This document shows, one piece after another, positions 7,530-46,144 of a DNA stretch of 64,000 bases. Both the position numbers and the translations under genes were made by a program. The notes below the pieces were generated by a model. It made no database searches. It saw only the letters and a program-made list of their open reading frames with translations, and had not been told where the DNA came from. The stretch is taken from assembly GCF_964194025.1 (NCBI RefSeq), contig NC_134470.1, positions 65,286,001 through 65,350,000 on the forward strand, written 5' to 3'. The stretch's first letter is position 1, and every line of letters begins with the position of its first letter. This DNA comes from Convolutriloba macropyga. Its lineage: Eukaryota.

Positions 7530-9562
7530 CTACAGCAATGAAGTACAGAGTCCAATTTCTGTTCTTGTATCTTCTTCTGAATCGAAAGAATCACTACCGC
7601 CCTGGTTGCTACGCGAAGCCGTGGTCGAGTTAGAAATCCGGTTTCCGCTCTCCAAATTCAACTCTGTTGGTCTTATGGACTCCTGTGTGGGCAACTGCGG
7701 CGGTGCTTCAAGGGGCGATGATGGCTCATTAAATGCCAAGCTTCTCTGTGCTCTTAATGTCGCAGGGTTACTCTGGCTACCACTTGGCATCACAGACTGG
7801 TTCTCGATTTTGCGATCACTTGTGACTAAAGGCGATAGGGGTTTCTTGCGTCTCAATGCAACTGGACTTGCGTTGTATTGGCTCAGAATCCTTTGGTGGC
7901 TTTCAGGAATTAGCCTTGTAGACAAAACTTCAGTTCCACTGTCCGCTTTCTTGGCTGATTTTGAGGACGTCTTCCGGCTGCTTCCAACTGATGAACTGCG
8001 ATGCGAAAGAACAGGAGACCCAGGAAAACTCCTCGAAACAGTACTTGGAGCAGTTGGTGCGTTTATATGTGGGTTCCTTGCAACTGGTACCTGAAGCGGG
8101 TAGACCGGACTGAAAGTATTACTACTAGAGGGTGATCCTGCCATTCCTCCAGTTGGATCCAAATTTCCCAGAGCTCTGGCTCGAATGGGGTGCGGGGCAA
8201 AGTGCTTTCGCTTCGGGGTTGGTTGAGGTAGATAATTGACCCAGGTTGCTACCCGGATAGTCTTAGCACAGTCTGGACAGTTAACTAATTGGTGATCTGG
8301 GTTTTTGATCTGTGGCGATTGAGGTGTATACGAATCAGGGTTCGACACTTCAGCTCGAACTAGAGCGTGTTTCCCACTTCGAGTCTTGGCAACGTCCAGA
8401 GATGATTTAAGTTGCTTCATCGCAATTCCGCCCCTATCGGGGGAATTGGTTCCACCCAAATGAACTATTTGCATGTCTTTGAAATTCATCGACGGCGATG
8501 GCGAATAAAAAGTTTCCACCATTCCATCACTGCTTTGATTGGACACCAATACAGTGACTTTTGGCTTCGTAGTTTTGTTCAAGAAACTTGGACTTGCAGG
8601 TTGCATAATTTCCTTTATAGACGTGAACAAATTAAGGGGTTTCTTTAAAGGTAACAGAACATGCAAAGCATAGAAGAGAAATATATAGTCGAGAAATCTC
8701 AACACAAGCAAAACAATGTCTGGCCACGCTACAATTGCAGGCAACGAATCCGGACATGGTTTTGAACCCAAATTTAAAAGTCGACATTTCCAGATTTCTT
8801 CGAAGAAAAAGTTCATGAAGGAATTTTGAAAAGATCTTGAATTGTGAAAGCAGTAAAGCCGAATTGCATTTGAAATGCAGATGAAAGTTGACATAATAAC
8901 AAATGATAATTTAAAAGCGTGATGTCTGATCGAATCGGTCAGAAGCATGAAAGAAACTGCAAGTTGCAAAATGAAAACAGCCGCCGGCTCGAAAGCAAAT
9001 AGAAACGGATGATTAATCACAATTGATGGGGTTCGTGATATAAAATTTGGGATAATTTCGCCCAAACAGGCTAAGCCCAATGCGAGTGAAAAGGCGAACA
9101 TAATCGCAACAAAGTTTATAGTTTTGACCTTCTTAGGCGAGGCAATAGTCTGGTACTGTTTATCACCAAACGCAACGCATTTTGCCATTGGGAAGTACTT
9201 GAGGCGCAAAACTAACCAAAACCATTCTATGGTTACCAAAAAGGACATAGAAAACGCAATGGTCGCCGAGAAGGCAAACTTCATGCTCCATTCAGGATGT
9301 AACTTCATCTCTAGTAAATTTGAGCTCTTTTCACAAAAATTAGAAAAATTGTGAACAAACGGCATCAACGAAACGCATAGCGTAACTAAAGCATCAACCA
9401 ATAAGAGCAATTTGAGAAACTTGAACTCGGTAACTCCCGATTTCTGAGGGCTGAAGTGTAGAAATAGCAAGACACATAGTTGGACCAGAAAGGAGGAGAG
9501 GACAATCGCAGGCGTGAACGAAGAGAATGGCTCCAGTTGATCACAGGGCATTCCACAATAAT
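7530..9562 (-). CDS. SMO: Smoothened-like class F receptor, last exon (7TM domain plus long Ser/Pro-rich tail)
   Basis: The 673-aa ORF extends upstream to acceptor catcag|at, giving YCGMPC (cf. Smo GCGIQC). Multiple hydrophobic helices; TM3 EWFWLVL (cf. VWFVVL); ECL3 YCFHNSRSFQNSFMNF..C (cf. YDFFNQAEWERSFRDY..C). Confidence 0.7.
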
Positions 9563-25421: not shown

Positions 25422-25612
25422 CTAGAATAAAAAAAAACATGCTGATCAAGCATCAAGTACTGCCAAGTTGTAGCATTAAATTGTCGTTGTTGAATAACAT
25501 CTCTTATGGAGCTAAATAAGAGCATGGGAATAATCGGAAGCTGAGAACTGTCACAAAACAATCAAATTACACGAACTTCAATTTTCCTTGACAATAATGA
25601 GTAGCAGGACGT

Positions 25613-26784
25613 AGTAGTAAGGTGTCTTACTGGGCACGCAACGGGGGGGGACATTTGGGTGTTACTGTGTTCGCAACGGGGGGGGACACGAAAAATTTTT
25701 TCGAAAAGTTGATAGTTTTTGGCGTTTTGGCAAGAGCGGTGGAAAACGCCAAAAACTATCGCCTTTTCGAAAAATTTTTTCGTGTCCCCCCCCCCGTTGC
25801 GAACACAGTAACACCCAAATGTCCCCCCCCCCCCCGTTGCGTGCCCAGTAAGACACATTTTTGGCAAATTTCTGAATTTTTTGACGTTTTTTGGTAGGTT
25901 TGGTTTGTTTTATATGTTAGTCGGGAAAAAGCACTGCTGTTCCAGTGGTTGTCATTTTGTAATCAGCCCAGGTGAGCCTCATCAGTAAAAAAAACTTTTT
26001 GAAAAAAAATTGAAAAAAAAATGAAAAATTCAAAGTGTTAAAATTGCATGAATTGTATTTTGCCCTGGGTTTCAGGTCTCAAAGACGATTTTTTGTTGAC
26101 CTCATCTCAGCTGGTGGGCCTAATCATTGAAAAAAACTTTGAAAAATTTTGGGAAAATTCAAAAATTTTCAAGTATTAAAATTGTGTGAAACACAATTTG
26201 CGCTGGGTTGCAGGTGTTAATGTTAATTTTTTGTGGACATCATTTTACCTGGTACTAAGATTATATCAAATGTTTTATAACCAAAAACTGTCATCAATAG
26301 ATTGTTGACTGTTTGTAGTATTCTTTATGTCTGTTACTATCAGTCAGTACTCTCAAATACTCTTATAACCCTTTATTTGATGATGCATGAGAATAAAATA
26401 TAGTAATAGGCAAGGAGGTGAGTGGTTGTTGCTATGCATGTGTTGTTGTTAGAACTCTCTGTGTCATCAATCTATTTTTAGAATATAATGTATACTATGA
26501 CTAACTACTATAGTCACTGCCGAAGGTCATTATACACGAGTAGTTGTCGTATTCCATTGTGATTGGGAGACCGATCGACCGAGAGTGTCTATGATTTATT
26601 TTTGAATAAGTTTACATTTTTGAATAAGTTCAACTGTCTGCATTGGGTGGTTTTGTTATTACAGTTTAACACAGTACTTGTATAGCAATAGAGCAAACTT
26701 ATAAGAATTTGTTTGAGTTTCAGTTTGAGTTTGAGTTTGATTTGTAAACAAACTATGCCAGCGGTTGACGATTGTTCCTTCTTT
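25613..26784 (+). repeat. Left TIR of the Polinton
   Basis: Reverse complement of 37068-38229 with a few SNPs and small indels; includes the terminal hairpin 25622-25856 and two ~140-bp direct repeats (25971-26250). Confidence 0.95.
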
Positions 26785-26862
26785 TTTATTTTTTCTCATG
26801 ACAGTAGCGGTACAGAAAGACGTTTTGTAGCTGTCAGTGTAAACACTTGTTTTTATACTTAA
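26755..26862 (+). pseudogene. Truncated, decayed copy of the PC4-like gene start in the left TIR
   Basis: MPAVDDCSFFFIFSHDSSGTERRFVAVSVNTCFYT* versus right-arm MPAVDDCSFFDFSHDITCTEKRYVVACVKTY. Confidence 0.8.
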
Positions 26863-27196
26863 AAAAATAGACATTAAAGAAGTAAATAATCTGCTTATGT
26901 CTTGCGCTTGAACTAACAGATTTAAATTTAATTGGATAAAAACTTCCGGGAAAACATATTGTACTAGCAAACTTCCAAGAGTCCTGCCATGAAAACATAT
27001 TGAATTTGTCATTATGAAAGTGTTTTTTTTTCAGAACATACTTTTAGCCATCAAATGAGAGAACACTAGAGACGAACAAACAATTAAAACATCAACAAAA
27101 CAACGAACAATGTTTTATTGTATTGTTAGTAGTTTATCAAGGTTGAGCAAATGCAATTCAAAAGATTATAACTGTTTGAGGTTTTAGGAGACTAGT

Positions 27197-27760
27197 TTAG
27201 AGTTTACGTTTTTTTGGAGCAAGACAAGAACTGACAGGCGGCGTTTCAAGACTGTTGGTTGCAACGAGCCTACTACATTCGGGTGTTTTGATTAAACTTG
27301 TTGAAATTGTTGTAGATGTTATCGAGTTTTCTAAGTTCTTGGTTGTTGAATCTGGAGTTTCAGTAATAGCTGGAATTTTCCAAAAGTTTTCAATGAGCTC
27401 CAAATCCTGCCAATATTCTTCCTGATTTTCGTAGATAGGTACTTCTTGAACATCGTAATCATAGAGAATTCTTCTAATATCATCTCCCAGAACGTTTGAC
27501 TCAAATATAAACTCACGAGTACAGCCCGCAACGAATTCCAGAGTATATTGAGCTCCCTTAAATGACGCTTTTTCACATCTAAAAGACTGAATGAAATCGA
27601 AAGTAACAACAGGTAATGCCATGTGTTTCACAGTTTTCCAGTCTTTGCCTTGATACTCTTGCTGAACAATAACAATATTTTCTTTTTTTAAAGTCTCGTA
27701 TGCAATTGTTCGACTGCTGGAAGAATATTTTTCTTTTAGTATAATTGCAATGGGAAACAT
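27197..27760 (-). CDS. Polinton hypothetical nuclear protein (187 aa; possible PC4-like N-terminal domain, C-terminal NLS)
   Basis: Intact ATG ORF ending PKKRKL; AATAAA on the minus strand at 27114-27119. Confidence 0.7.
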   Translation of the reverse strand: MFPIAIILKEKYSSSSRTIAYETLKKENIVIVQQEYQGKDWKTVKHMALPVVTFDFIQSFRCEKASFKGAQYTLEFVAGCTREFIFESNVLGDDIRRILYDYDVQEVPIYENQEEYWQDLELIENFWKIPAITETPDSTTKNLENSITSTTISTSLIKTPECSRLVATNSLETPPVSSCLAPKKRKL

Positions 27761-28579
27761 TTTAAGATTTCAGTGATATCTTCGTCTGTTTACAATCGTA
27801 TAAGTGGCCTTGAATAAATTGATGAAGACTGTAAAATATACCAAAAAAAAGACTGTTAGAAAAATCTAAGAAGAATATGGTAAATATAATGAGTTAATTA
27901 CTGTTGAAGTAATCTGATTAGTTGTTATCAACAAGAATTATCAAAGCTTAAACCTATATCAATACAATTTCCAACGATTGAGACAGAATATAAATATTTT
28001 ACTTATAAAGTATTGAATCTAAAGAATCTTGTTTAAGCGAAGAACTGAAAACTCATTTTGTGGGTGGTCTGCTACCGTAAATAGAAGTGTTTGTGTTCTA
28101 CAAACATTTAATTATATGGACGAGAAGATATTTTCTTTAGTGTCTGCTGTTTTTATGCTACATGTACTCAGCTTATCTAAAATAAAGACAGATTAGAAAG
28201 TATCCGTGTAATCCCAGCCAGTTCTTATCTTTCCGGAAAGCTATTTTAAGAATCAATATAGAACATTTTAAGTGGGTTGTTATTTTATTTACAATACCTT
28301 ATGTTCAAACTGGTGCTATAAAACAGAAATAATAGACAAATTCTTTTTTGTTGTGTTTGACTTTCTAATGAAAGAGAGTTTGTATAAAAATGTCACTGTT
28401 TTACGAATGAACGAGGACAAACATGAAAAATGTTTTAATTACTTTTAACGCTTTCAACTGCAGCAGACAATTAGTTTTGTAATCTGTTCCTCTATGAATT
28501 AGATTGATTTAATTTTTTCATAGAGAAAATCAAAAGTGTCTATTTTTTTCAGATTCAGTCGACTTCAATCTAACTCGGA

Positions 28580-29011
28580 ATGCGTCTTGATAAACCAATA
28601 GTTTGTAGATATTGTTTGAAAAACATTCATGAGAAGTATTTGTTATTAGCCACAACATACCCAAACAATTCAGTAAGACTGAACTATTTCTTAGCAGCAA
28701 GTGAATACTTTAGTCAAAAGGAAAACTTTGATTATGATAATGCTTTGAAACTTCGACCTTACGGAGGACTTATTGGAATAGATAACTCTTCTTTAGATTC
28801 ATACCTAAACAACTCCAAAATTCTACGATTACACGCAATTTTGCATGACGCTGGTGGTTTCATCCAGGAGCTCTACACTGAAGGACCCGGCTACTCGTAC
28901 ATGCTTCCCTGGAAGCTTAATAGTTGTTTCACTGGACATCTGACAGGAATTCTTTTTTGTTTGTATATTAAAGTTTTCCACTCAAAAATTTATCACTTGT
29001 TGGAATGTTAA
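28580..29011 (+). CDS. Putative phospholipase A2-like protein (143 aa)
   Basis: YGGLIG loop followed by LRLHAILHDA (His-Asp dyad), reminiscent of parvoviral/adintoviral PLA2; first ORF of the + strand block after acceptor tttttttcag. Confidence 0.5.
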   Translation: MRLDKPIVCRYCLKNIHEKYLLLATTYPNNSVRLNYFLAASEYFSQKENFDYDNALKLRPYGGLIGIDNSSLDSYLNNSKILRLHAILHDAGGFIQELYTEGPGYSYMLPWKLNSCFTGHLTGILFCLYIKVFHSKIYHLLEC

Positions 29012-29637
29012 GCAGTAAAACAGTTGTGTGAGACCTTGAAGGTTTCCGTCACAGGAAAGAAAAATTTATTGTTAAAGAGTTTGGTATATGTACTGAAGAT
29101 TACAACGATTGTGTTTTGTTTTCACCAACATCAAAATTTTCCGATTTGACAAATCCGCAGAAAACTACAATCAGTTGGTTATCTAAAAACTTACATGGCT
29201 TAGATTGGAACTCTGAAAACTATCCCTACATTTATCTAACACAAATTGTCCAAAGCGTTCGCTTAAGAAACCCAAGAGCGGTTTACTACGCTAAAGGTTT
29301 TGAAAAGTCTCAACTTTTATCGGAGTTGCTCGATTGTCCAGTAATCGATTTAAATACTCTGAAGTGTCCTAAAATATCTTACAGTTTTTTTACAGTTAAC
29401 TGTGGGAATCATAGCTCAACACAACGTGGTATCTTCAACAATCATTGTGCACGGGAAAAAGCTTGTTTCTATTTTGACTGGTTGACAAATGAGAGAGGAA
29501 TTGACGAAAGTGGAAGCACCCTTGTCAGCGAATTCGACTATTTGCGCCTTGATCACGAAGGAGGGGACACTGAACCTTTCAATTTGCAAAGGAGAAGCGA
29601 TAAAAAGTGGTACTCAAATTCGTCAGAAAAAAGTTAG
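29005..29637 (+). pseudogene. DEDD-family 3'-5' exonuclease-like protein with a premature stop at codon 9
   Basis: ATG at 29005 gives MLSSKTVV*DLEGFRHRKEKFIVKEFG, in frame with ORF 29116-29637 (WL...HGLDW, KGFEK, DL...CP, HCA); TGA at 29029-29031. Confidence 0.7.
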
Positions 29638-29785
29638 GGTGTTATTGACAGAGGAAATTCGTTCGATTACACACTTGGTTTTTTACATCGAGCCTTTCAT
29701 TCAGTGGAGAAAACAAAATGTCAGATTCTCAACGCAAAGTCTCGCCTCCGAAACTTCTATTGATATCGAAACATCCAACTGGTAA
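29489..29785 (+). CDS. Polinton hypothetical protein (98 aa; possible PC4-like fold)
   Basis: ATG ORF overlapping both neighbours within the packed + strand block. Confidence 0.55.
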   Translation: MREELTKVEAPLSANSTICALITKEGTLNLSICKGEAIKSGTQIRQKKVRVLLTEEIRSITHLVFYIEPFIQWRKQNVRFSTQSLASETSIDIETSNW

Positions 29786-29966
29786 AGAAGTAGATCAAAA
29801 TGACAAAATGCTGCCTGAAGAAATTCAGGAACTCGTGAACACGGACAAAGTCAAAAAAATTGTGTACTATGAAAAAACTACAAGATTACCCGCATGTTTC
29901 ATGGTGCACATGAATGAATTTTTGAGTGATTATAGTTGTTATGAACTGTTCTATGTAAAACATTAA
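29718..29966 (+). CDS. Polinton hypothetical protein (82 aa)
   Basis: ATG ORF followed directly by AATAAA at 29974-29979. Confidence 0.55.
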   Translation: MSDSQRKVSPPKLLLISKHPTGKEVDQNDKMLPEEIQELVNTDKVKKIVYYEKTTRLPACFMVHMNEFLSDYSCYELFYVKH

Positions 29967-30008
29967 AAAGTACAATAAATTTTCATTTTATACACATTTT
30001 CTTTTGTG

Positions 30009-30275
30009 ATGGAACAAGTAACAGTTGATCAAGTTGTGCAAGAAACTCTTTTCGAAAAGCAAAGTAGTGGAAAATCTACTTGGAAATTTTGTAACCAGAT
30101 AACATTACCAAGGTCGGAAGTTGTGTTTTTTGTTCAAATGTTTGTAATTTTGATGCTAATAGTTCTTTGCATTGTGAAATTGACTTTGCTTAAACCAACT
30201 TGTGAGGAAACATCAGTTTGGATTTCGATTTTGTCAAGTTTAGTTGGATATATCTTACCAAATCCTCGATTATGA
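30009..30275 (+). CDS. Small two-transmembrane protein (88 aa)
   Basis: Two hydrophobic segments ending WISILSSLVGYILPNP; its stop overlaps the ATPase start (ATGA). Confidence 0.75.
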   Translation: MEQVTVDQVVQETLFEKQSSGKSTWKFCNQITLPRSEVVFFVQMFVILMLIVLCIVKLTLLKPTCEETSVWISILSSLVGYILPNPRL

Positions 30276-30964
30276 ACAAAATTATCCCTACCAGTGACAG
30301 AATCTTTATGGCCGTGGTAGGTCCGTCGAGTTGTGGTAAAACGAATTTAATTTTCAGAATATTAACAGGAAACACCTTTTATCCAAAGTTTAAAAATGTT
30401 ATTTTTCTTTACCACGAAATGCAACCAATATACTCACAAGTTGACCAGCATTCAAACATTGTTTTCAAAAAATTCACAAACTTGGAGTTTTTGCAAAATA
30501 CTGAAAATTGTTTGCTTATATTTGATGATTCTTGTGAGGAAATTTTTAATGACAAAGAGTTTGTCAAGCTGGCTACCGCAGGTCGACACAAGAACATTAA
30601 TGTCATTTATGTGAAACACAATCTTTACCAGCAAAGTAAATGGTCACGAACAATAGATTTGAATACAACTCATATCATTTTGTTCAAATCACCACGTGAC
30701 GTTCAGCAAGTCGAGTTTCTCGGTAAGCAACTGAATCTTACTCATTTTTTAAAAAATTGTTATGAAATAGCAACAAGAGAAACATTTGGACACTTATTGC
30801 TTGACCTGGATCCAAAAACTTCGGACTGTCTACGATTTTGTTCAAACATTACAGAGCCTGGACCGTCGGTCTTCTACATACCTTCAGACAAAGCCGATAT
30901 TACTCACATATCAAATGAACGAGAAAAAATTCTTTATACTGAAGCGAATGGTACTTTTATCTGA
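30272..30964 (+). CDS. A32/FtsK-like genome-packaging ATPase
   Basis: Walker A GPSSCGKT, Walker B LLIFDD, A32-type motif TAGRHKNI; ATG at 30272. Confidence 0.93.
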   Translation: MNKIIPTSDRIFMAVVGPSSCGKTNLIFRILTGNTFYPKFKNVIFLYHEMQPIYSQVDQHSNIVFKKFTNLEFLQNTENCLLIFDDSCEEIFNDKEFVKLATAGRHKNINVIYVKHNLYQQSKWSRTIDLNTTHIILFKSPRDVQQVEFLGKQLNLTHFLKNCYEIATRETFGHLLLDLDPKTSDCLRFCSNITEPGPSVFYIPSDKADITHISNEREKILYTEANGTFI

Positions 30965-31220
30965 TTCTGAGTTGAGGAAATTTCTCCGCACTTACGACGA
31001 CAATATTGTATTGGTACTGTGTGAATGTTTTTACAACGTAATCAGAGGACATGTAAAAGTTCAGATTAACGATTTGGAGCAATATGAAAACGTGATCAAG
31101 ACTATTCTTCGTAAAAACGTTTCAGTTGAAAAGAAAAGAGCCATACTACTCACAAAAACAGGTTTTGATTTAGTTCGGCTCATTATTCATTTTTGCTACC
31201 AGTATTTGAGTCAATCATAA
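30948..31220 (+). CDS. Small helical Polinton/adintovirus protein (90 aa)
   Basis: LCECFYNVIRGHV...KKRAILLTKTGF pattern resembling a small ORF found next to the ATPase in animal Polintons (recalled, not searched); ATG at 30948. Confidence 0.65.
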   Translation: MVLLSDSELRKFLRTYDDNIVLVLCECFYNVIRGHVKVQINDLEQYENVIKTILRKNVSVEKKRAILLTKTGFDLVRLIIHFCYQYLSQS

Positions 31221-31231
31221 AAGAGAAGAAA

Positions 31232-31987
31232 ATGACAACTGCTGAGGAATTTATTTTAATTCCCAAAAAAGTTTATATGAAAACTCAACCATACCAAACC
31301 CGGGTCTTAGAGAATCCTGACGTTAAACACAAATCAGCACAGCTCTCTATTATAAATAGAATGCGACCAAAGGAACACATTGAAGCACAGTTCAATGACA
31401 AACTGTCGGAACAAGACTCTGGTGTTGATGATGATGAAAATCGGCTCAAACATTCAAATAGACGGGCAGATCAGGTCCTAAAAACATTGTCATCTCTCTT
31501 GCCTCATTCAAAATACCTAAAGTGTAATTATATTGTAGATCTAATTAAAAAGTCTAATCGTGTGCTCATTGGTGAAGACGAGAAGTTACTCATTGACAAC
31601 AGTCCAACTGACATAAACGCATTCACTTTCTTGTACAATTTACAGCAACCAACAAAGAAAATTGACAGTCCTGATTATTTTGAATTATTAAAAGTGTTAC
31701 AAATAAAGGAAGAACAAGTAATTAACAGCAATGCTAAAACTTCGATCAGGAAAAGTTCTCCAGAAACCGCAACAAAAAGAAAAAAAATCGTCAATAAATC
31801 ACAGAAACAAAAACGTTCAAGGTTTCAAAAGCCCCCAAAACAAGACAACCAGAAGCAGCAACAGACCAGCAGAGCACTAATCACCGAAGACGAAAGCAGT
31901 AGTGACGAAAAAGAAGAGGAAGGTTTCGAAACTCCGTACGAACCAAGTGCACAGAAGGAAAAACAATGGGAATCTTACGACGAGTGA
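31232..31987 (+). CDS. Polinton hypothetical protein (251 aa; basic and acidic low-complexity tail)
   Basis: Long intact ORF in the core block; NLS-like KRKK. Confidence 0.8.
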   Translation: MTTAEEFILIPKKVYMKTQPYQTRVLENPDVKHKSAQLSIINRMRPKEHIEAQFNDKLSEQDSGVDDDENRLKHSNRRADQVLKTLSSLLPHSKYLKCNYIVDLIKKSNRVLIGEDEKLLIDNSPTDINAFTFLYNLQQPTKKIDSPDYFELLKVLQIKEEQVINSNAKTSIRKSSPETATKRKKIVNKSQKQKRSRFQKPPKQDNQKQQQTSRALITEDESSSDEKEEEGFETPYEPSAQKEKQWESYDE

Positions 31988-32918
31988 AGAAAAATTGCTG
32001 CAGTCAATGTACACAAAAGGGCCAGCTGCGTTTGGAAGCGTTGAAAATTTACAAAAAAACACAAAATTACAACCTCGCAAAGTGAAACAGTTTCTAGAGA
32101 CCAAGAATGCTCACACAAAATATAAGGGCTTTCGAAAAAGTTTTGCACGTTTGAAAGTTATTGCATATGACCTTGATGAAATTTGGTCTCTTGACTTGGC
32201 ACACGTGGACAAACTGTCAAAACAAAACGCAGGTATTAGGTACTTATTGATTGCTGTTGACTGTCTTTCACGCTATCTACGTGTCGAACCACTCAAATCA
32301 AAATATGCAACAACAACAGCTGAAGCCTTCAAACGTATGATTAAGCATAAACAGCCGAAAAAAGTTTGGGTGGATGCTGGAACAGAGTTTAAGGGAAACT
32401 TCAAAACACTTTGCCAGAGGAGAAACATTACAATTTATCAAACTTTCAGCGAAAAGAAGTCTGCGTTTGCAGAAAGGAACATCCGCTCTTTAAAGAATAA
32501 TATTTACAAGTATCTGGAAGAAAAATGGACATATTCATACATCTCTCAGTTGAAAAATTTTGTGCAAACAATAAACTCACGCATCAACCGTGTAACAAAA
32601 ATAGCTCCGAACAAAGTAACCAAAAAAGACGTTCCTTATCTGTTATCATTAAATGCAAGTGCATCCGAGAAATTAGTTAGTCGACCCAAATTTCGAATTG
32701 GTGATTTTGTTAGAATATCAAAAATTGATTTACCCTTCCGAAAAGGTTACAAACAAACATTTACCGACGAAGTGTTTGAAGTTTACGATATTCCAACGAT
32801 AAACCCTCCAACATACAGCCTAATTGATTCGAATCAGAATCCAATCAGTGGTAAGTTCTATCAATTGGAACTAGTGAAAGTTGCTGACAACAGCGAAGCG
32901 TTCACAAAGCATGCATGA
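31977..32918 (+). CDS. Retroviral-like (rve) DDE integrase
   Basis: WSLDL (D), WVDAGTEF (D), AERNIRSLK (E); C-terminal FRKGYKQTFTDEVF and GKFYQLEL motifs; start uncertain (ACG at 31977 or ATG at 32007). Confidence 0.95.
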   Translation, partial: TTSEEKLLQSMYTKGPAAFGSVENLQKNTKLQPRKVKQFLETKNAHTKYKGFRKSFARLKVIAYDLDEIWSLDLAHVDKLSKQNAGIRYLLIAVDCLSRYLRVEPLKSKYATTTAEAFKRMIKHKQPKKVWVDAGTEFKGNFKTLCQRRNITIYQTFSEKKSAFAERNIRSLKNNIYKYLEEKWTYSYISQLKNFVQTINSRINRVTKIAPNKVTKKDVPYLLSLNASASEKLVSRPKFRIGDFVRISKIDLPFRKGYKQTFTDEVFEVYDIPTINPPTYSLIDSNQNPISGKFYQLELVKVADNSEAFTKHA

Positions 32919-33774
32919 GTTTACCATACATTTAGTTTCATCAGCTTCCATGGACATTTTTCCAGAAAACACTTTGGCTAACTTCAAAAACTTTTTCAAT
33001 GAAGAAATCAGTCTGCAAGGTGATTGGAGAGTAGCTTTGAGTGAAATTATCTTCCCATCCAGAATCAACCAGGTTAATAACACTCGAATCATAAAGTATT
33101 CCTCTGAAGGTAACAAAAACCATCAGAGAAGTATTCCATCTGGTGCTGTTTCAAAACCATACAAAGGGGAGACAGTCTTGATCAATACTGGAAGCTATGA
33201 GAACTTGGAACACCTGATAAAAGCCATCAAGACAGCTACTGGTCTAACTAAATTCAGTCATCAGTACAATAAAATCACAGGCGTTTTGGTTTTGTTTTTT
33301 GGTAAAAATGAAGGAATTACATTTCCTGACGAAGAAATACCAAGCATTCTGGGCTTTGAAGGAATCAAAGATGGGTCAGGTACTCATATTGGTTATAAAA
33401 TGATAGATTCCTTTGACAATTTGGCACTGGGTGACGGAGAAGCAAAAGCTTTTGTTGCTGATTACCCTTTTGATCTGCTTGCAGGAAAACAATTGATATT
33501 TGTATACAGCAACATAATTGAGTATCAACACATTGGAGACACAAAAGCTCCGCTGATTCGTATCATTGATTCAAAACAACGCCTGAAAAACGGTAGCCTT
33601 TGTGAAATTGAACCTACGCATAGAATAGTTTTTAGCAATTTGGAATATAAGAAATTGTTGTCAAACAATTTTCAGTGTATTGAAGTTCAGTTGAGAACCG
33701 AAACTGGCAAATTTGTTCCATTTACGGGAACAGGAAAAGTTATTCTTACTTTAAACTTTAAAAAATTTAATTAA
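32911..33774 (+). CDS. Minor capsid protein (penton, single jelly-roll)
   Basis: N-terminal FTIHLVSSASMDIFPENTLANF...LQGDWRVALSEI and C-terminal FVYSNII..Q..GD...PL.R...LTLNF, typical of Polinton pentons. Confidence 0.88.
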   Translation: MHEFTIHLVSSASMDIFPENTLANFKNFFNEEISLQGDWRVALSEIIFPSRINQVNNTRIIKYSSEGNKNHQRSIPSGAVSKPYKGETVLINTGSYENLEHLIKAIKTATGLTKFSHQYNKITGVLVLFFGKNEGITFPDEEIPSILGFEGIKDGSGTHIGYKMIDSFDNLALGDGEAKAFVADYPFDLLAGKQLIFVYSNIIEYQHIGDTKAPLIRIIDSKQRLKNGSLCEIEPTHRIVFSNLEYKKLLSNNFQCIEVQLRTETGKFVPFTGTGKVILTLNFKKFN

Positions 33775-34200
33775 ATGGAAGCTTATTATCAACAACAATC
33801 AGTTTCACCATACTTTGCAGGACACTATCGTCAACGAGGCAGTGGGTTCGGGGCTTTAGCGGCTGGAATTGGTAGGGCGGCCATACCGATAGCTAAAAAG
33901 TTTTTGTGGCCTGTTGCTAAAAAGATTGGAAGAGAACTGTTTGTACAGGCGGCACCAGAGATTGTTGACGTTGTAGCCAAAAAGAAGAGTCCTAAAGAAG
34001 CACTCAAGTCAACTGTTCAGAAAACGGTAAAGAAACAAGTCGGTGGCTCAAGAGCCCGAATTGGAGGTGTTCGTGGTGGAAATGTTTATAAAAAACAGAA
34101 ACAGAGCGGTCCTGTCAAATCCCGAAAAATCATTCAGAGAAAACAACCGTTACTGAGAAGTCGGTCAGATTTCTTTTCCAAAGTGAAAAATGAATACTAA
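33775..34200 (+). CDS. Basic amphipathic virion protein (core or membrane-lytic precursor)
   Basis: YY..Q...RQRGSGFG followed by an amphipathic Lys-rich helix; protease-site-like QVGG, RIGG and VRGG; Arg/Lys-rich tail. Confidence 0.75.
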   Translation: MEAYYQQQSVSPYFAGHYRQRGSGFGALAAGIGRAAIPIAKKFLWPVAKKIGRELFVQAAPEIVDVVAKKKSPKEALKSTVQKTVKKQVGGSRARIGGVRGGNVYKKQKQSGPVKSRKIIQRKQPLLRSRSDFFSKVKNEY

Positions 34201-35511
34201 TTTATTGCCAGCAGAGGCAACACACACAACTCTAGACTTGTTTGAAAAGCAGCCTCTCCTGATCACCTTTGACAATGCTTTTACCCAAAAGGTTGGTCCA
34301 TCATACTCACCGGATGGTCCAATGCTGGAATTCGAAGTTGTTGGCGACAGGAACAACTTTATTGATTTGCAAAAGTTTCTACTTGAAATAAAATGCAAAA
34401 TCACGAGAACCAATGACGCCGATTTGAGAACTGGTACTGATGCCACAAACACAGATTCGCCGTATTTTAGCAATAACGCATTACACTCTCTGTTTTCAGA
34501 GTGTACAGTTTCGGCAAATGGCGTTAAATTGTCAAATACAAACGGCAACTACGCACACAAGGCTTTCATAGAAACAGAATTCTCATCCGGAAGAACAGCA
34601 AAGAGCACATGGTTAGTTTGTCAAGGCTATTATTATGAAGACGAACCGGCTAAAATTGATGGAGCTGACAACAGAGCTACTGATGTTGCTGCGCGAAAAG
34701 CTTTAGTTGCTGACTCTCTGGAATGTTCTCTACTTGGAAAACCGGCCAGTGATATATTGACCTGTGACAAACATCTTCTCAGTGGTGTTACACTACGCAT
34801 CTCCTTCAGAAGGTCTCCAAACGATTTTACCGTCATATCCGAATCTAATAAACATTACAGAGTAAAAATTGTTGAAGCAAATCTGTACGTGCGCAAAATG
34901 ACCGTGGCTGATCATGTGTTGTCTGCGATAGAAAAAACTTTGCTAAAAACACCAGCTGTCTATCGGTACACGGAGGTGTTGCCCAGAACTTTTCTTGCCA
35001 CTGCTGGCATCCGCAGTTGGAGTCAAGAAGACATCTTCTCCAAAGAGTTCGAAGAATGATTATAGCAATGTCAACCAATCAATCATATTTAGGAACTAAC
35101 AGAACGAATCCTTTCCATTACCAGAAATTCAATTTGAATGAAATAGTAATTTATCGAAATGGACTACCGGTTGTTGGAACACCAATTTCAACAACCTCAG
35201 ATCAACGAGTCTACTTCAACACGCTTGAAGCTTTAGATTTTCTTGATAAAGGTGGTCATGGCATTCCCCTAGCTGATTATCCAAATCACTTTATTTTGGC
35301 CTTTGACCTTACTTCAACACAGGAGGCTTCACACGATTTTATTCATCCTGAATTAACAAATTGTTCAATTTCAGTGGAGCTCACTTTTGGAACACCTTTG
35401 GGTGACAACGTTGAAATTTTATTCCTAGGCGAACGAAGTTCAACTTTTTACGTCAACTCTGAACGAAAAGTAACCAAAAACTCGGTTATTACATATCCTG
35501 TTGATGGATAA
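34190..35511 (+). pseudogene. Major capsid protein (double jelly-roll, hexon-like), split by a frameshift near 35046
   Basis: ORF 34190-35059 (NNALHSLFS, ANLYVRK) continues in another frame as VRRMIIAMSTNQSYLGTNRTNPFHYQKF...AFDLT; ~440 aa when joined. Confidence 0.88.
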
Positions 35512-35935
35512 TTTTGAGATAACTTATCTAGTAAATAAATGTTTTCATCTGAAGCACAAGTTCTGTGGAGTTTTTGCAGCTGACAATTTTCCAAGACTGC
35601 CAGAAAATTGCTTTGCTGTGGTCAATGCCTCAATATCAACATCATCGGGTAGTCATTGGCTACCGATTTGTAATTATAAAAAAACAATGTACTTTGCTGA
35701 TCCACTTGGGCAAGCACTGGATTGCTACCATTTTGTATACACTCGACTGCTGCAGTTCTACTTCGAAGAAGAAGTCGTTCAGTGTCTCAGATTGCAGCCA
35801 ATTCAGAGCCCAAACTCCAAACTGTGTGGACTCTTTTGTATTTATATTGCTCATATTATTTTCACATATAGCTATCCGTTTGTACACTACATGAATGATG
35901 ATGATTTACTACGATTTGCTAAGCATATGATGTAG
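35504..35935 (+). CDS. Adenain-like cysteine protease (capsid maturation)
   Basis: Catalytic H (GSHW), D (FADPLG), Q and C (IQSPNSKLCGLFC). Confidence 0.92.
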   Translation: MDNFEITYLVNKCFHLKHKFCGVFAADNFPRLPENCFAVVNASISTSSGSHWLPICNYKKTMYFADPLGQALDCYHFVYTRLLQFYFEEEVVQCLRLQPIQSPNSKLCGLFCIYIAHIIFTYSYPFVHYMNDDDLLRFAKHMM

Positions 35936-36039
35936 GACAAATCAATCAATTTAAATTTTTTAGCATCAACTGTTTTCATAAATTCGTAACTTTTTCCCCT
36001 TGATGCTAGATCACTCATTTTTTAATAAAACAAGTAGGA

Positions 36040-36648
36040 TTAATTTTTTAATTCAAATCGAAAGTTACATTTTACATTCTCTTTATCAACATTCAGGGAG
36101 CCATATCCACTAATAATAATATCAATAATTTTTGAAAATTCTGCATAAGAACTGTTCTGATAAATACTTAAAAATCGGTTAAAAGTACAAGTTGGTAAGA
36201 AATCAGTTTGAACTTGAACATTCTCTTTGACAGTCTCCAGTTCAAAGATATTTGGAAGCTTTCTTTTGGAGCAATATAAATCTAGCTGATGTTGGTGATT
36301 GTAAATGACTGCTTGCTGCAACTTCTCAAAAATTTCACCGTGAAAAGTGATGTTGACAGATTGTGTTTTGTGGAGTAGAAGTCTGAAACATGTGTATAGG
36401 CAAGGTATAGAATAGGGTTTTGAAGAATTTTTTTTGAAAGCCTCTGTTACTTGATCCAAAGCTGCAATAACATGATAGTGTTGTTCTTTTATTCTACAAA
36501 AGCTGTTATTCTCATGCAAACTGTAAGCAAAACTGTTGTTGATTTCTTTAGTATCAAATATTGGCTCACTTCTGCAGATAAAATAGTGAAATTTTTTTCG
36601 AAACTGTCGAAAGAATTCAGGTGTTCGTTCAAACATTGCCTCAACCAT
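36040..36648 (-). CDS. Putative HUH-superfamily (Rep_2-like) endonuclease-fold protein (202 aa)
   Basis: FHYFICRSE / FAYSLHENN / KEQHYHVIA / CLYTCFRLLLHK are collinear with Rep_2 motifs; HYH at 36472-36480; the canonical catalytic Tyr position appears to be Leu. Confidence 0.5.
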   Translation of the reverse strand: MVEAMFERTPEFFRQFRKKFHYFICRSEPIFDTKEINNSFAYSLHENNSFCRIKEQHYHVIAALDQVTEAFKKNSSKPYSIPCLYTCFRLLLHKTQSVNITFHGEIFEKLQQAVIYNHQHQLDLYCSKRKLPNIFELETVKENVQVQTDFLPTCTFNRFLSIYQNSSYAEFSKIIDIIISGYGSLNVDKENVKCNFRFELKN

Positions 36649-36650
36649 TT

Positions 36651-37097
36651 TCAATACTGTGTGTCGCTCTCAGAACTTTTCTTCGCTTTCTTCTTTGATC
36701 GACCAGCAACCTGAGTTGAATTAAAGCTATTCGTCTCCGGTGAGAACGCAAACTGATAACGTCGTTTCCTTCCCGTTATCTTATTGTGTTCTTTTTTGAT
36801 AGGTTGTTCTGATTGTCCGGTCCTTAGTTTTTCACAGAGTGAATTGTAGCTTTGAGATAATTGTTCAAACTCGGCTAAAGATAGTGTTATTCTCTGGTTG
36901 AACTTGAAACCATCACTGTTACAATTGTTTCTGTTGTCTTGGGTTTGATCACGGAAGTTATCTTTTTTTAAAAGTTTTACCGTTATATATGTTCCAGTAG
37001 AGTCATAAGTTTTCACACAAGCAACTACATAACGTTTTTCTGTACATGTAATATCGTGAGAAAAGTCAAAGAAGGAACAATCGTCAACCGCTGGCAT
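36651..37097 (-). CDS. PC4-like ssDNA-binding protein (148 aa)
   Basis: KRYVVACVKTY...TYITVKLLKK...FNQRITLSLAEFEQL follows the PC4 strand-strand-strand-helix pattern; basic tail; ATG lies inside the right TIR. Confidence 0.6.
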   Translation of the reverse strand: MPAVDDCSFFDFSHDITCTEKRYVVACVKTYDSTGTYITVKLLKKDNFRDQTQDNRNNCNSDGFKFNQRITLSLAEFEQLSQSYNSLCEKLRTGQSEQPIKKEHNKITGRKRRYQFAFSPETNSFNSTQVAGRSKKKAKKSSESDTQY

Positions 37098-38229
37098 AGT
37101 TTGTTTACAAATCAAACTCAAACTGAAACTCAAACAAATTCTTTTAATTTTGCTCTATTGCTATACAAGTACTGTGTTAAACTGTAATAACAAACCACCC
37201 AATGCAGACAGTTGAACATGTAAACTTATTCAAAAATAAATCATAGACACTCTCGGTCGATCGGTCTCCCAATCACAATGGAATACGACAACTACTCGTG
37301 TATAATGACCTTCGGCAGTGACTATAGTAGTTAGTCATAGTATACATTATATTCTAAAAATAGATTGATGACACAGAGAGTTCTAACAACAACACATGCA
37401 TAGCAACAACCACTCACCTCCTTGCCTATTACTATATTTTATTCTCATGCATCATCAAATAAAGGGTTATAAGAGTATTTGAGAGTACTGACTGATAGTA
37501 ACAGACATAAAGAATACTACAAACAGTCAACAACCTATTGATGACAGTTTTTGGTTATAAAACATTTGATATAATCTTAGTACCAGGTAAAATGATGTCC
37601 ACAAAAAATTAACATTAACACCTGCAACCCAGCGCAAATTGTGTTTCACACAATTTTAATACTTGAAAATTTTTGAATTTTCCCAAAATTTTTCAAAGTT
37701 TTTTTCAATGATTAGGCCCACCAGCTGAGATGAGGTCAACAAAAAATCGTCTTTGAGACCTGAAACCCAGCGCAAAATACAATTCATGCAATTTTAACAC
37801 TTTGAATTTTTCATTTTTTTTTTCAATTTTTTTTCAAAAAATTTTTTTTACTGATGAGGCTCACCTGGGCTGATTACAAAATGACAACCACTGGAACAGC
37901 AGTGCTTTTTCCCGACTAACATATAAAACAAACCAAACCTACCAAAAAACGTCAAAAAATTCAGAAATTTGCCAAAAATGTGTCTTACTGGGCACGCAAC
38001 GGGGGGGGGGGACATTTGGGTGTTACTGTGTTCGCAACGGGGGGGGGGGACACAAAAAAATTTTTCGAAAAGGCGATAGTTTTTGGCGTTTTCCACCGCT
38101 CTTGCCAAAACGCCAAAAACTATCAACTTTTCGAAAAATTTTTTCGTGTCCCCCCCCCCCCCCCGTTGCGAACACAGTAACACCCAAATGTCTCCCCCCG
38201 TTGCGTGCCCAGTAAGACACCTTACTACT
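37068..38229 (-). repeat. Right TIR of the Polinton
   Basis: Reverse complement of 25613-26784; terminal hairpin at 37980-38220. Confidence 0.95.
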
Positions 38230-38574
38230 GGACGTGCCAATTCTAGTTCCCCGTTCACGTATTTTTCACTTACTTAGTTGATTAAGTTTTACATGGATTG
38301 GAAGAAGACTTTGGATGGCTATAATTTGAGGGTGTCAGAACGCTGAAAATTAACGTAGTGGATTGCTTTGCTGCGCAACTGCTGTCTAAAAGCACTTTGA
38401 GCAGAATGAGCAAATTTTATACCATATCTTCATTTCTGCACTAAAAAGCTTGCCTTCTCAAAACAATTGCGGAGAATTAATAGCTTTCATCCACATAAAA
38501 GTATTATCTTGGCATATAGGATCCAAAGCCTTGAAATTTGGAAAATCAAACCTGGTTTTTTAAAATCGGCTTAC

Positions 38575-45417: not shown

Positions 45418-45781
45418 TCAAGGTTCACTGATAGTGAACAATTTGAACTGGATACGATTATAGTATTCTTCTCCCGGTCGCAAGACAATACTTGGGAACT
45501 CAGTGTGATTCACAGCGTCCGGGTATCCATGAGCCTCAAATGCAAACGAGCTGTGATGTCTATATTCAGTACCATCTTTGCCTTCGTCCACATTAATGTA
45601 GTAATTATTGTAGAACTGAAAACCTGGTTGATTTGAGCTCATGTGAAGACACACATCTTTGAATTGTGCCTTGGCGTGCCATTCAGTTTCACGTTTCTTC
45701 TCGTCCGTCATACAGAAATAGTTGTCAAATCCAACACCACAGTTAACGCTCTCCAAAATGGTTCCCAGCCGAACTGCGTTT
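45418..45781 (-). CDS. GALM: Aldose 1-epimerase (galactose mutarotase), exon 5
   Basis: GFDNYF, NQPGFQFY, FAFEAHGYPDAVNH.EFPSIVLRPGEEY; acceptor ttacag. Confidence 0.92.
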
Positions 45782-46144
45782 CTGTAACAATCTTCCGGTC
45801 TCATAAGTTTCACAGACATATAAAAAGATGAAAAGACCAGGCAAAATAGGAAAAGTGTCAGAAAGACAACTCCAGAAGGAACTCAAAGCATAGTCGAGAC
45901 GGGACAAGACGCCCGTCCATATAAATATAAATCCCAAGGTAATAGTCGTAAAAACTATTGGGCGGGAACAATAATCAAAAGCCCAAATTCTTAAAACAGC
46001 AAAAAGCATCATACAGAAGCAACTATCAGGCACTGGGAGCTCCGAAAAATCTCACCGATGCAGTAACTAAGATGCTTTAGCAACCAACTCCAATGAAAAA
46101 TGCCAGTAAAGCCATAAAACAAGCAATTCCGTAATGGAATATGA

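What the first reader, a model, noticed from the sequence alone, without database searches (positions are those of the whole stretch)
36040..36648. Candidate HUH (rolling-circle/rolling-hairpin Rep) endonuclease inside a Polinton
Seen: KKFHYFICRSEP ... FAYSLHENN ... KEQHYHVIAALDQVTEAFKK ... CLYTCFRLLLHK. By eye this is collinear with plasmid Rep_2 initiators such as pMV158 RepB (hydrophobic motif I, SPLHDKD, KKAHYHVL, YLYLTH), and all three putative metal-binding His are kept. The motif III Tyr aligns with Leu (CTT), though a Tyr lies five residues earlier. Established: HUH enzymes nick hairpin origins in parvoviruses, Helitrons and plasmids, and they are not part of the canonical Polinton gene set. 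Inference: either an active terminal resolvase using a shifted Tyr or a catalytically dead origin-binding protein.
Basis: inference. Interest (0 to 1): 0.85.

Follow-up and report, generated by a model that had tools for sequence, protein, structure and literature searches.

The report
Rep-like metal-binding protein in Polintons
A small gene kept by many Polinton (Maverick/adintovirus-like) elements encodes a protein predicted to fold like the DNA-nicking domain of rolling-circle replication initiators and keeps their metal-binding histidines, but has no universally conserved catalytic tyrosine, so it is more likely a DNA-binding helper than a proven nickase.

Summary
A 202-codon ORF lies at 36040-36648 on the minus strand and contains all four quoted peptides. 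It sits in a 12,617-bp Polinton (25613-38229) with a 6-bp target duplication.

The ORF belongs to a wide, unnamed family: 195 clusters at E<=1e-3. In every context I read with enough flank, the gene lies between the polymerase side and the protease-capsid block.

AlphaFold2 models are confident (pLDDT 86-87). Foldseek's best PDB matches are Rep-class HUH domains, pMV158 RepB first (probability 0.91, TM 0.42-0.45), but E is only 0.06. 33 of the top 50 hits are HUH Reps.

H47, H59 and H61, plus C53 and C85, are among the 13 most conserved of 204 columns. No Tyr is at that level: Y118 is kept in 44/58, Y87 in 29/58, and neither in 9/58. No sequence profile links the family to any HUH family.

Verdict: an HUH-like, probably HUH-derived, metal-binding domain plus a small C-terminal domain, acting as a replication-side accessory protein. 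I favour DNA binding without obligatory covalent Tyr chemistry. An active nickase is not excluded for this copy, which has both tyrosines.

The hairpin-resolvase idea is weakened. A polymerase-bearing relative carries the gene but has no terminal palindrome. I class this as a new variant of a known kind, of moderate interest.

The parts
36040..36648 (-). The gene in question: 202 codons from the ATG, stop codon included. An in-frame TTG two codons upstream at 36654 sets the residue numbering used in this report.
36280..36648 (-). N-terminal Rep/HUH-like domain (residues 3-125). Predicted order: helix, helix, strand 23-27, strand 42-46, strand 60-64, helix 71-75, helix 86-94, strand 102-105, helix 107-121.
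   Evidence: AF2 models, (pLDDT 87.3 and 85.8, pTM 0.81 for the domain); Foldseek
36472..36480 (-). H59-Y60-H61, the HUH-type motif at the start of predicted strand 60-64.
   Evidence: read; conservation (H59 54/57, H61 52/57)
36514..36516 (-). H47, candidate third metal ligand, at the start of the loop between strands 42-46 and 60-64.
   Evidence: 53/58
36496..36498 (-). C53, a conserved Cys in the same loop.
   Evidence: 54/57
36400..36402 (-). C85, a conserved Cys just before helix 86-94.
   Evidence: 55/58
36301..36303 (-). Y118 on helix 107-121. It is the best-kept Tyr (44/58, Phe in 8) and a candidate motif-III equivalent, but not invariant.
36394..36396 (-). It is kept in 29/58, with Phe in 19.
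36043..36207 (-). Small C-terminal domain (residues 150-204): two helices plus a beta hairpin, with conserved R160, D178, G183 and G185. Its function is unknown.
36651..37133 (-). Upstream partner ORF (160 aa) on the same strand, two bases before the target's ATG. It is homologous to the ORF that precedes the family gene in L001, L003, L004 and L007.
25613..38229 (.). The whole Polinton copy: 12,617 bp, tips AGTAGTA...TACTACT, and no polymerase gene.
25607..25612 (.). Left target-site duplication, GGACGT.
38230..38235 (.). Right target-site duplication, GGACGT.
25613..26784 (.). Left terminal inverted repeat arm, about 1.17 kb.
37068..38229 (.). Right terminal inverted repeat arm. Its inner edge overlaps the start of the 160-aa ORF.
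37977..38223 (.). Right terminal palindrome: stem of about 115 bp with a 14-nt loop. Its mirror copy lies at about 25619-25865.
   Evidence: DNA fold -131.5 kcal/mol, z -23
35501..35935 (+). Adenain-type protease gene, tail-to-tail with the target.
   Evidence: PF00770, E 3.4e-8
34190..35511 (+). Major capsid protein gene, broken once by a frameshift.
31902..32918 (+). rve-type integrase gene.
30218..30964 (+). A32/FtsK-like packaging ATPase gene.

Best explanation
The ORF encodes a conserved accessory protein of the replication side of Polinton/adintovirus-like elements. Its N-terminal domain of about 120 residues is an HUH-like, most likely HUH-derived, alpha/beta domain of the Rep class. 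It keeps the metal site: H59-x-H61 on the central strand and H47 in the preceding loop, as in RepB. It has added two invariant cysteines, C53 and C85. I infer that the metal site has become a tightly held, probably Zn-type, His/Cys site. I also infer that the protein acts mainly by binding the element's DNA, either the ends/origin or displaced single strands, during polymerase-driven replication. On this reading it does not depend on the covalent tyrosine cut-and-join chemistry of true Rep proteins. The 50-residue C-terminal domain would add dimerisation or a second DNA contact. What is shown: the gene, the family, its conserved genomic position, the predicted fold, the ranking of structural neighbours and the residue conservation. 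What is inferred: metal binding, DNA binding and the lack of nicking.
For: The family is wide and has diverged under constraint. In the window, L001, L002, L003, L005, L007, L008 and L009 the gene lies on the polymerase-facing side of the protease-capsid block. Its partner ORF was compared only in L001, L003, L004 and L007. AF2 models are confident. With the domain model, the seven best PDB matches are all pMV158 RepB OBD (best probability 0.91, TM 0.42-0.45). 33 of the top 50 are Rep-class HUH domains: AAV2 Rep, smaco-, gemini-, nano- and vientovirus Rep, and SIRV1 ORF119. The full model gives 32 of 50. The named BFVD matches with a function are parvovirus NS1 and microvirus replication initiators; three named 'Uncharacterized protein' entries also appear. 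The RepB paper places its catalytic residues in the beta2-beta3 loop, strand beta3 and helix alpha3 (PMC9943647). H47 and C53 lie in the corresponding predicted loop and H59/H61 on the corresponding strand. H47, C53, H59, H61 and C85 are all among the 13 best-conserved of 204 columns. Tyr is not at that level: Y118 is kept in 44/58 with Phe as the main substitute, Y87 in 29/58, and neither in 9/58. That pattern fits structural aromatics.
Against: Foldseek E-values (0.06 or worse against PDB, 0.007 or worse against BFVD) and TM scores below 0.5 do not establish homology on their own. No profile search links the family to any HUH family. Known catalytically dead HUH derivatives have lost the His motif (my own knowledge), so a retained triad could instead mean retained catalysis. 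Most members, including this copy, do have Y118. I could not read model coordinates, so I did not verify that the five residues form one site. Nothing here tests DNA binding.
Confidence: 0.4

Rival explanations
1. It is an active HUH-type nickase. Metal bound by H47, H59 and H61 polarises a phosphodiester in single-stranded or hairpin DNA at the element's ends. A Tyr (Y118, or Y87) attacks it, giving a free 3'-OH and a covalent protein-DNA link. This would serve end resolution or release of the integrated copy for replication.
For: The HUH-like fold has RepB as best neighbour. The full His triad is conserved. Y118 is present in 44/58 members and in this copy, on a helix after the HUH strand. 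This element's tips are 245-bp palindromes able to fold into hairpins. 49 of 58 members have at least one of Y87 or Y118.
Against: No Tyr is conserved at the level of the ligand residues. 9/58 full-length members have neither Y87 nor Y118. One ligand-intact member (P0077) has Tyr at none of the candidate positions 8, 14, 87, 118 or 184. The polymerase-bearing relative L001 has the gene but no terminal palindrome, so hairpin resolution cannot be the family's general job. Two invariant Cys next to the site are not a feature I know from active HUH enzymes (my own knowledge). No sequence-level membership in an HUH family was found.
Confidence: 0.2
2. The HUH likeness is convergent or superficial. 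The protein is a Zn-binding alpha/beta (ferredoxin-like) domain with another role, such as transcription regulation, protein-protein adaptor or virion-associated factor.
For: Structural scores are sub-threshold, and 17 of the top 50 PDB hits are unrelated alpha/beta proteins. The His3Cys2 pattern resembles a zinc site. All profile searches against named families fail. Adintovirus surveys list conserved proteins of unknown function ('Adintoc') for which BLASTP and HHpred found nothing (PMC8502044).
Against: HUH Reps dominate three independent hit lists. HxH lies on the central strand with a third His in the preceding loop, which is the RepB arrangement. The only function-annotated weak profile hits that fit any theme are Rep_OBD (E 0.079) and a phage 'replication initiation protein' (E 0.024), one member each. 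The gene sits on the replication side of the element.
Confidence: 0.25
3. It is the counterpart of the adenovirus single-stranded DNA-binding protein (E2A DBP). DBP is also a zinc protein and, from my own knowledge of adenovirus maps, is also encoded convergently just after the protease gene.
For: The relative position, capsid then protease then a convergent gene, is conserved in the window, L003 and L008. Conserved His and Cys residues are present.
Against: No adenovirus DBP structure appears in the top 50 PDB matches of either model. The protein is less than half the size of DBP. The synteny argument rests on memory and was not tested here.
Confidence: 0.05

Closest known systems
RepB of plasmid pMV158, origin-binding/nuclease domain (PDB 8AMU, 8AMT, 3DKX; Pfam Rep_OBD PF01719, formerly Rep_2)
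   Same: It is the best structural neighbour of the predicted N-terminal domain. Both have the HxH motif on the central strand, a third His in the preceding loop, a domain of about 130 residues followed by a short hinge, and a small C-terminal domain.
   Different: There is no detectable sequence-profile relationship. RepB has an essential Tyr99 on helix alpha3 (PMC9943647), whereas this family has no invariant Tyr. This family has two invariant Cys, and two extra N-terminal helices are predicted. Its C-terminal domain is helix-helix-hairpin, while RepB's is described as a helical domain that forms the hexamer (PMC9943647). The host replicon is a polymerase-encoding eukaryotic element, not a rolling-circle plasmid.
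Parvovirus NS1 / AAV2 Rep origin-binding nuclease domain (PDB 5BYG, 4ZO0, 6XB8)
   Same: It is the second group of structural neighbours.
   Different: TM is only about 0.4 over a larger domain. AAV Rep is fused to an SF3 helicase and has an essential Tyr. Here there is no helicase, and terminal hairpins are not a family-wide feature.
Catalytically dead HUH derivatives: polyomavirus large T OBD and papillomavirus E1 DNA-binding domain
   Same: They show that a Rep-like fold can be reused purely for origin DNA binding. PMC9943647 compares E1 with RepB and AAV Rep.
   Different: From my own knowledge, those domains have lost the HUH histidines and are fused to SF3 helicases. They do not appear among the top Foldseek hits. 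Here the His triad is among the best-conserved positions.
HUH endonuclease genes of Mriyaviruses and Mriyavirus-like ('Zora') Polinton-like viruses
   Same: They are HUH-type genes in small eukaryotic viruses with double jelly-roll capsids (bioRxiv 10.64898/2026.06.19.733378; PMC11253617 listed).
   Different: Those are taken to mark rolling-circle replication and to distinguish such viruses from Polinton-like viruses. The present family occurs together with protein-primed polymerase and rve integrase, is only about 200 aa long, and lacks a conserved Tyr.
[quoted passage not shown] 2021, PMC8502044)
   Same: They are conserved, unnamed proteins of animal-associated Polinton-like viruses for which BLASTP and HHpred gave no clear hits. 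This family may be one of them.
   Different: Identity with a particular Adintoc class could not be checked, because no member of the family carries such a name in the collections searched.

Membership tests
HUH endonuclease superfamily, Rep class | His-hydrophobic-His motif on a central beta strand, followed by hydrophobic residues | tested here: met
   H59-Y-H61-V-I lies at the start of predicted strand 60-64. H59 is kept in 54/57 and H61 in 52/57. Position 60 is Y, W or F in 54/57.
HUH endonuclease superfamily, Rep class | A further metal ligand completing the site (the 'histidine triad' of RepB, PMC9943647) | tested here: inconclusive
   H47 (53/58) lies in the loop before the HUH strand, as in the RepB description. 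Spatial proximity could not be checked because model coordinates are not readable with these tools.
HUH endonuclease superfamily, Rep class | [quoted passage not shown] | tested here: not met
   No Tyr column reaches the conservation of the ligand columns. Y118 is kept in 44/58 (Phe in 8), Y87 in 29/58 (Phe in 19), and neither in 9/58. The window copy itself has both.
HUH endonuclease superfamily, Rep class | The HUH nuclease fold | tested here: inconclusive
   The AF2 domain model has pLDDT 85.8 and pTM 0.81. The top seven PDB hits are RepB OBD, and 33 of 50 are HUH Reps. However, the best E is 0.062, the probability 0.91 and TM 0.42-0.45.
HUH endonuclease superfamily, Rep class | Site-specific single-strand nicking with a covalent 5'-phosphotyrosine intermediate | not testable with these tools
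   This is a biochemical property and no computation here addresses it.
Pfam Rep_OBD (PF01719, formerly Rep_2; the pMV158 RepB family) | Score above the curated threshold of the family model | tested here: not met
   The window protein has no hit. One of 44 family members has a hit at E 0.079, which fails even the tool's default E-value cut of 0.001. A family profile does not retrieve RepB chains from the PDB at E<=10.
Dead HUH-derived origin-binding domains (large T OBD, E1 DBD) | Rep-like fold with loss of the HUH histidines and Tyr, fused to an SF3 helicase | tested here: not met
   The histidines are retained. There is no helicase domain: the protein is 202 aa, and longer relatives have no meaningful Pfam domains. 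These domains are not among the top 50 Foldseek hits.
Adenovirus DNA-binding protein (E2A DBP) | DBP fold with two zinc sites | tested here: not met
   No DBP chain is among the top 50 PDB matches of either model. The only likeness is gene position, which I recalled from memory.
Unnamed conserved Polinton/adintovirus-like protein family (this family) | Full-length homology and a conserved position on the polymerase-facing side of the protease-capsid block | tested here: met
   195 representative clusters at E<=1e-3. The same position is seen in the window, L001, L002, L003, L005, L007, L008 and L009, which include marine metagenome contigs.

The most novel reading that the evidence does not exclude
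Polymerase-encoding Polintons carry a working, non-canonical HUH-type nickase with a His3/Cys-assisted metal site and a variable nucleophile. It would cut at the element's ends. This would give integrated copies the free end that protein-primed replication needs, by analogy with how parvovirus Rep frees integrated genomes. It could also let polymerase-less derivatives with hairpin-forming tips, like this one, multiply. The result would be a hybrid of adenovirus-like and parvovirus-like replication logic.
Probability: 0.12. Interest if true: 0.9.

Novelty: new variant of a known kind. Interest (0 to 1): 0.6.

Why it matters
Polintons/Mavericks and adintoviruses are viewed as protein-primed replicons whose known replication gene is the polymerase, with a built-in terminal protein (PMC11161782). 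Several of their conserved genes have no assigned function (PMC8502044).

If this widespread 200-residue protein is derived from the Rep/HUH nuclease fold, one of those unknowns gets a structural identity. It would also link the polymerase-bearing lineage to the Rep world, which has so far been seen only in Mriyavirus-like relatives. It would further point to a candidate player in an open question: how the ends of an integrated element are recognised when replication starts.

The His3Cys2 constellation without a fixed Tyr would also be an unusual state for the HUH superfamily. It lies between active nickases and the fully dead origin-binding domains of tumour-virus helicases.

Tried and rejected
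**Sequence-level links to HUH families.** All of these failed:
- Pfam on the ORF.
- phmmer and a family profile against PDB sequences. The only hits were chance MCR-1 matches at E about 1.2.
- Pfam and PHROGs on 44 members. Each gave one weak Rep-themed hit, E 0.079 and E 0.024, roughly what chance allows.
- An alignment-seeded search of 5.8 billion proteins, which returned family members only.

**Profile-profile comparison with the RepB family.** This could not be run:
- pMV158 (X15669 and NC_010096, both named in papers) and pGL2 (HE650696) are not in the plasmid collection.

**Longer relatives.** I looked for a fused helicase or other domain and found none that was meaningful.

**Names for family members.** The only name found was 'hypothetical protein'.

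**Terminal-protein idea.** I set it aside because the Polinton terminal protein has been assigned to the polymerase N-terminus (PMC11161782).

**Upstream 160-aa ORF.** By eye it looked like a PC4-type single-strand DNA-binding domain. Pfam and PDB profile searches gave no support, so this remains an untested impression.

**Literature not held.** Two papers were unavailable: Boer et al. 2009 and the Chandler et al. 2013 HUH review (one search was a rejected query).

**Residue-level mapping.** I could not decide whether helix 86-94 or helix 107-121 corresponds to the RepB Tyr helix, because Foldseek alignments and model coordinates are not returned.

- My first notebook entry and the printed output of one script show the bounds of the two pieces of the broken capsid gene, and so bracket its break.

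Full report
**1. What is in the sequence**

The finding's coordinates hold one ORF on the minus strand, 36040..36654, of 204 aa counted from a TTG. Homologues start at the ATG two codons downstream (36648). That gives 202 aa and matches the finding's bounds.

The surroundings are a Polinton:
- an A32-like packaging ATPase at 30218-30964;
- an rve integrase at 31902-32918;
- a capsid gene at 34190-35511, broken once by a frameshift;
- an adenain-type protease at 35501-35935.

The element runs from 25613 to 38229 (12,617 bp). Its tips read AGTAGTA...TACTACT. It has terminal inverted repeats of about 1.17 kb and a perfect 6-bp target duplication, GGACGT.

**2. The gene is real and belongs to a wide family**

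A word-seeded search found 25 close relatives. An exhaustive HMMER scan of 1.84 billion representatives found 195 clusters at E<=1e-3 and 85 at E<=1e-10, most about 200 aa long. No member carries a name other than 'hypothetical protein'.

Between lineages dN is 0.33-0.96. dS is saturated, and dN/dS is 0.13-0.42 where it could be computed. Between two 98%-identical copies the ratio is 0.71, as expected for recently inserted copies drifting neutrally.

**3. Genomic position**

I could read enough flank in the window, L001, L002, L003, L005, L007, L008 and L009. In each, the gene lies between the polymerase side and the protease-capsid block. Where both genes are present it is tail-to-tail with the protease. 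These contexts include marine metagenome contigs such as Tara Oceans, and a 13-kb scaffold (L003) with uninterrupted ORFs.

In the window, L001, L003, L004 and L007 a second conserved small ORF precedes it on the same strand (window 36651-37133). I take this position as a gene-neighbourhood argument for a role on the replication side. That is an inference.

**4. Predicted structure**

AlphaFold2 with 44 homologues gave pLDDT 87.3 for the whole protein. With 80 homologues, the N-terminal 128 residues gave pLDDT 85.8 and pTM 0.81.

The predicted order of elements is:
- helix 2-8, helix 12-21;
- strand 23-27, strand 42-46, strand 60-64;
- helix 71-75, helix 86-94;
- strand 102-105, helix 107-121;
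- a less confident linker;
- a small domain of helix 155-165, helix 170-182 and a beta hairpin.

**5. Structural neighbours**

- *Domain model against the PDB.* The seven best matches are all the pMV158 RepB origin-binding/nuclease domain. The best has E 0.062, probability 0.91 and TM 0.42-0.45. Then come AAV2 Rep and the Rep domains of smaco-, gemini-, nano- and vientoviruses, plus SIRV1 ORF119. By my count 33 of the top 50 are Rep-class HUH domains.
- *Full model against the PDB.* 32 of the top 50 are HUH Rep domains.
- *Full model against predicted viral structures.* The named matches with a function are parvovirus NS1 and microvirus replication initiators, at E 0.007-0.07. Three named 'Uncharacterized protein' entries also appear.

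No single score is significant and TM stays below 0.5. The similarity is therefore remote. However, the consistency of three hit lists is hard to ascribe to chance.

**6. Residue conservation**

I used 58 full-length representatives chosen by length alone, to avoid circularity.

| Position | Kept in | Comment |
|---|---|---|
| H47 | 53/58 | candidate metal ligand |
| C53 | 54/57 | candidate metal ligand |
| H59 | 54/57 | HUH motif |
| H61 | 52/57 | HUH motif |
| C85 | 55/58 | candidate metal ligand |
| Y118 | 44/58 | Phe in 8 |
| Y87 | 29/58 | Phe in 19 |

All five His/Cys positions are among the 13 best-conserved of 204 columns. H59-x-H61 sits at the start of the central predicted strand, and H47 and C53 lie in the loop before it.

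The RepB literature places that enzyme's catalytic residues in the beta2-beta3 loop, strand beta3 and helix alpha3, with a histidine triad holding Mn2+ and Tyr99/His102 on alpha3 (PMC9943647).

Tyrosine is another matter. Nine of 58 members have neither Y87 nor Y118. One member with all five ligand residues intact has Tyr at none of the candidate positions. Exchange between Tyr and Phe is the signature of a structural aromatic residue, not of a nucleophile.

I could not decide which helix, 86-94 or 107-121, corresponds to the RepB Tyr helix. The tools return neither the structural alignment nor coordinates. The conclusion does not depend on that choice.

**7. Sequence-level membership fails**

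- The ORF has no Pfam hit.
- Neither the ORF nor a family profile retrieves RepB from PDB sequences.
- One of 44 members hits Rep_OBD at E 0.079, and one hits a phage 'replication initiation protein' family at E 0.024. That is about what chance allows, although both fit the theme.
- An alignment-seeded search returned no new relatives.
- A profile-profile comparison with the RepB family could not be run, because the plasmid records named in papers are not in the plasmid collection.

**8. The ends of this element and the resolvase idea**

The outer 245 bp or so of each terminal repeat is a near-perfect palindrome. The right one is at 37977-38223 and folds as DNA at -131.5 kcal/mol, z -23. The element therefore does have hairpin-capable tips.

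This copy has no polymerase gene at all. It appears to be a deletion derivative in which the polymerase end is replaced by an inverted copy of the other end. A second copy, 98.3% identical, lies at a different site (L007).

A polymerase-bearing relative in the same assembly (L001) is 17,451 bp long and has the TSD GGCATT and the same AGTAGTA tips. It carries the family gene but has plain 240-bp TIRs and no palindrome of 30 nt or more. Hairpin resolution therefore cannot be the family's general function.

**9. Interpretation**

I commit to the following. The protein is an HUH-like, probably HUH-derived, metal-binding domain joined to a small C-terminal domain. It serves the replication side of Polintons, most likely by binding the element's DNA without obligatory covalent Tyr chemistry (confidence about 0.4).

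The rivals are:
- an active nickase (0.2), not excluded for this copy because it has both tyrosines;
- convergence, meaning a zinc-binding alpha/beta protein with an unrelated role (0.25);
- a counterpart of the adenovirus DNA-binding protein (0.05). This rests on gene position only, and no DBP structure is among the structural neighbours.

**10. Comparison with what is known**

In the held literature, HUH genes are reported in Mriyaviruses and Mriyavirus-like Polinton-like viruses, where they are taken to mark rolling-circle replication. A fowl adenovirus ORF is described as a captured parvovirus Rep.

For polymerase-bearing Polintons and adintoviruses, the papers I read describe the terminal protein as part of the polymerase. 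They also describe conserved proteins of unknown function called 'Adintoc'. I found no mention of an HUH-like gene in them.

I therefore rate this as a new variant of a known kind. The evidence level is a confident model, a consistent but sub-threshold fold match, and a conserved metal motif.

**11. Slips**

Noticed in passing
window 25613-38229; L007 8286-20609; L001 1065-18515: This Polinton copy has no polymerase gene. Its 1.17-kb TIR looks like an inverted duplication of the right end replacing the polymerase end. A second copy, 98.3% identical, lies at another site (L007), so the polymerase-less form has multiplied. The 17.4-kb relative L001 has the polymerase and 240-bp TIRs.
   Followed up: partly
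window 37977-38223 and about 25619-25865: Each tip of the element is a near-perfect palindrome of about 245 bp (DNA fold -131.5 kcal/mol, z -23). It is built from G-run-containing repeats, and the motif GTTCGCAACGGGGGGGG occurs 4 times at each end. No such palindrome was found in the polymerase-bearing relative L001. Its origin and meaning are unexplained.
   Followed up: partly
window 36651-37133 (-): The 160-aa ORF just upstream of the target, with its stop two bases before the target's ATG, has a conserved N-terminal domain of about 75 residues. That domain is shared with the ORF preceding the family gene in L001, L003, L004 and L007. By eye it recalled a PC4-type single-strand DNA-binding domain, but Pfam and PDB profile searches gave nothing.
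   Followed up: partly
window 34190-35511 (+); L007: The major capsid gene of the window copy is broken once by a frameshift. In the sister copy L007 the capsid and integrase regions are called as several short ORFs, while the target ORF is intact in both. dN/dS between the two copies is 0.71, so there is no sign of host domestication.
   Followed up: partly
L003 1-3126: The polymerase ORF of metagenome scaffold L003 has a Pfam Endonuclease_7 (HNH-type) match at residues 299-351. This is consistent with homing-endonuclease insertions reported in Polinton polymerases (PMC11161782).
   Followed up: no
window 7530-9551 (-): A 673-aa ORF outside the element is the longest in the window and has no Pfam match. 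It was not investigated.
   Followed up: no
window 45418-45819 (-): This ORF matches the C-terminal part of aldose 1-epimerase (PF01263, E 3e-14). It is presumably an exon of a host gene. The host organism was not identified.
   Followed up: no
target protein residues 129-150 (window about 36205-36270, -): The low-confidence linker between the two domains carries well-conserved short motifs: K-L-P around P134 (57/58), and Q149 and T150 (86% and 83%). Their role is unknown. A protein-contact or modification site is possible.
   Followed up: no
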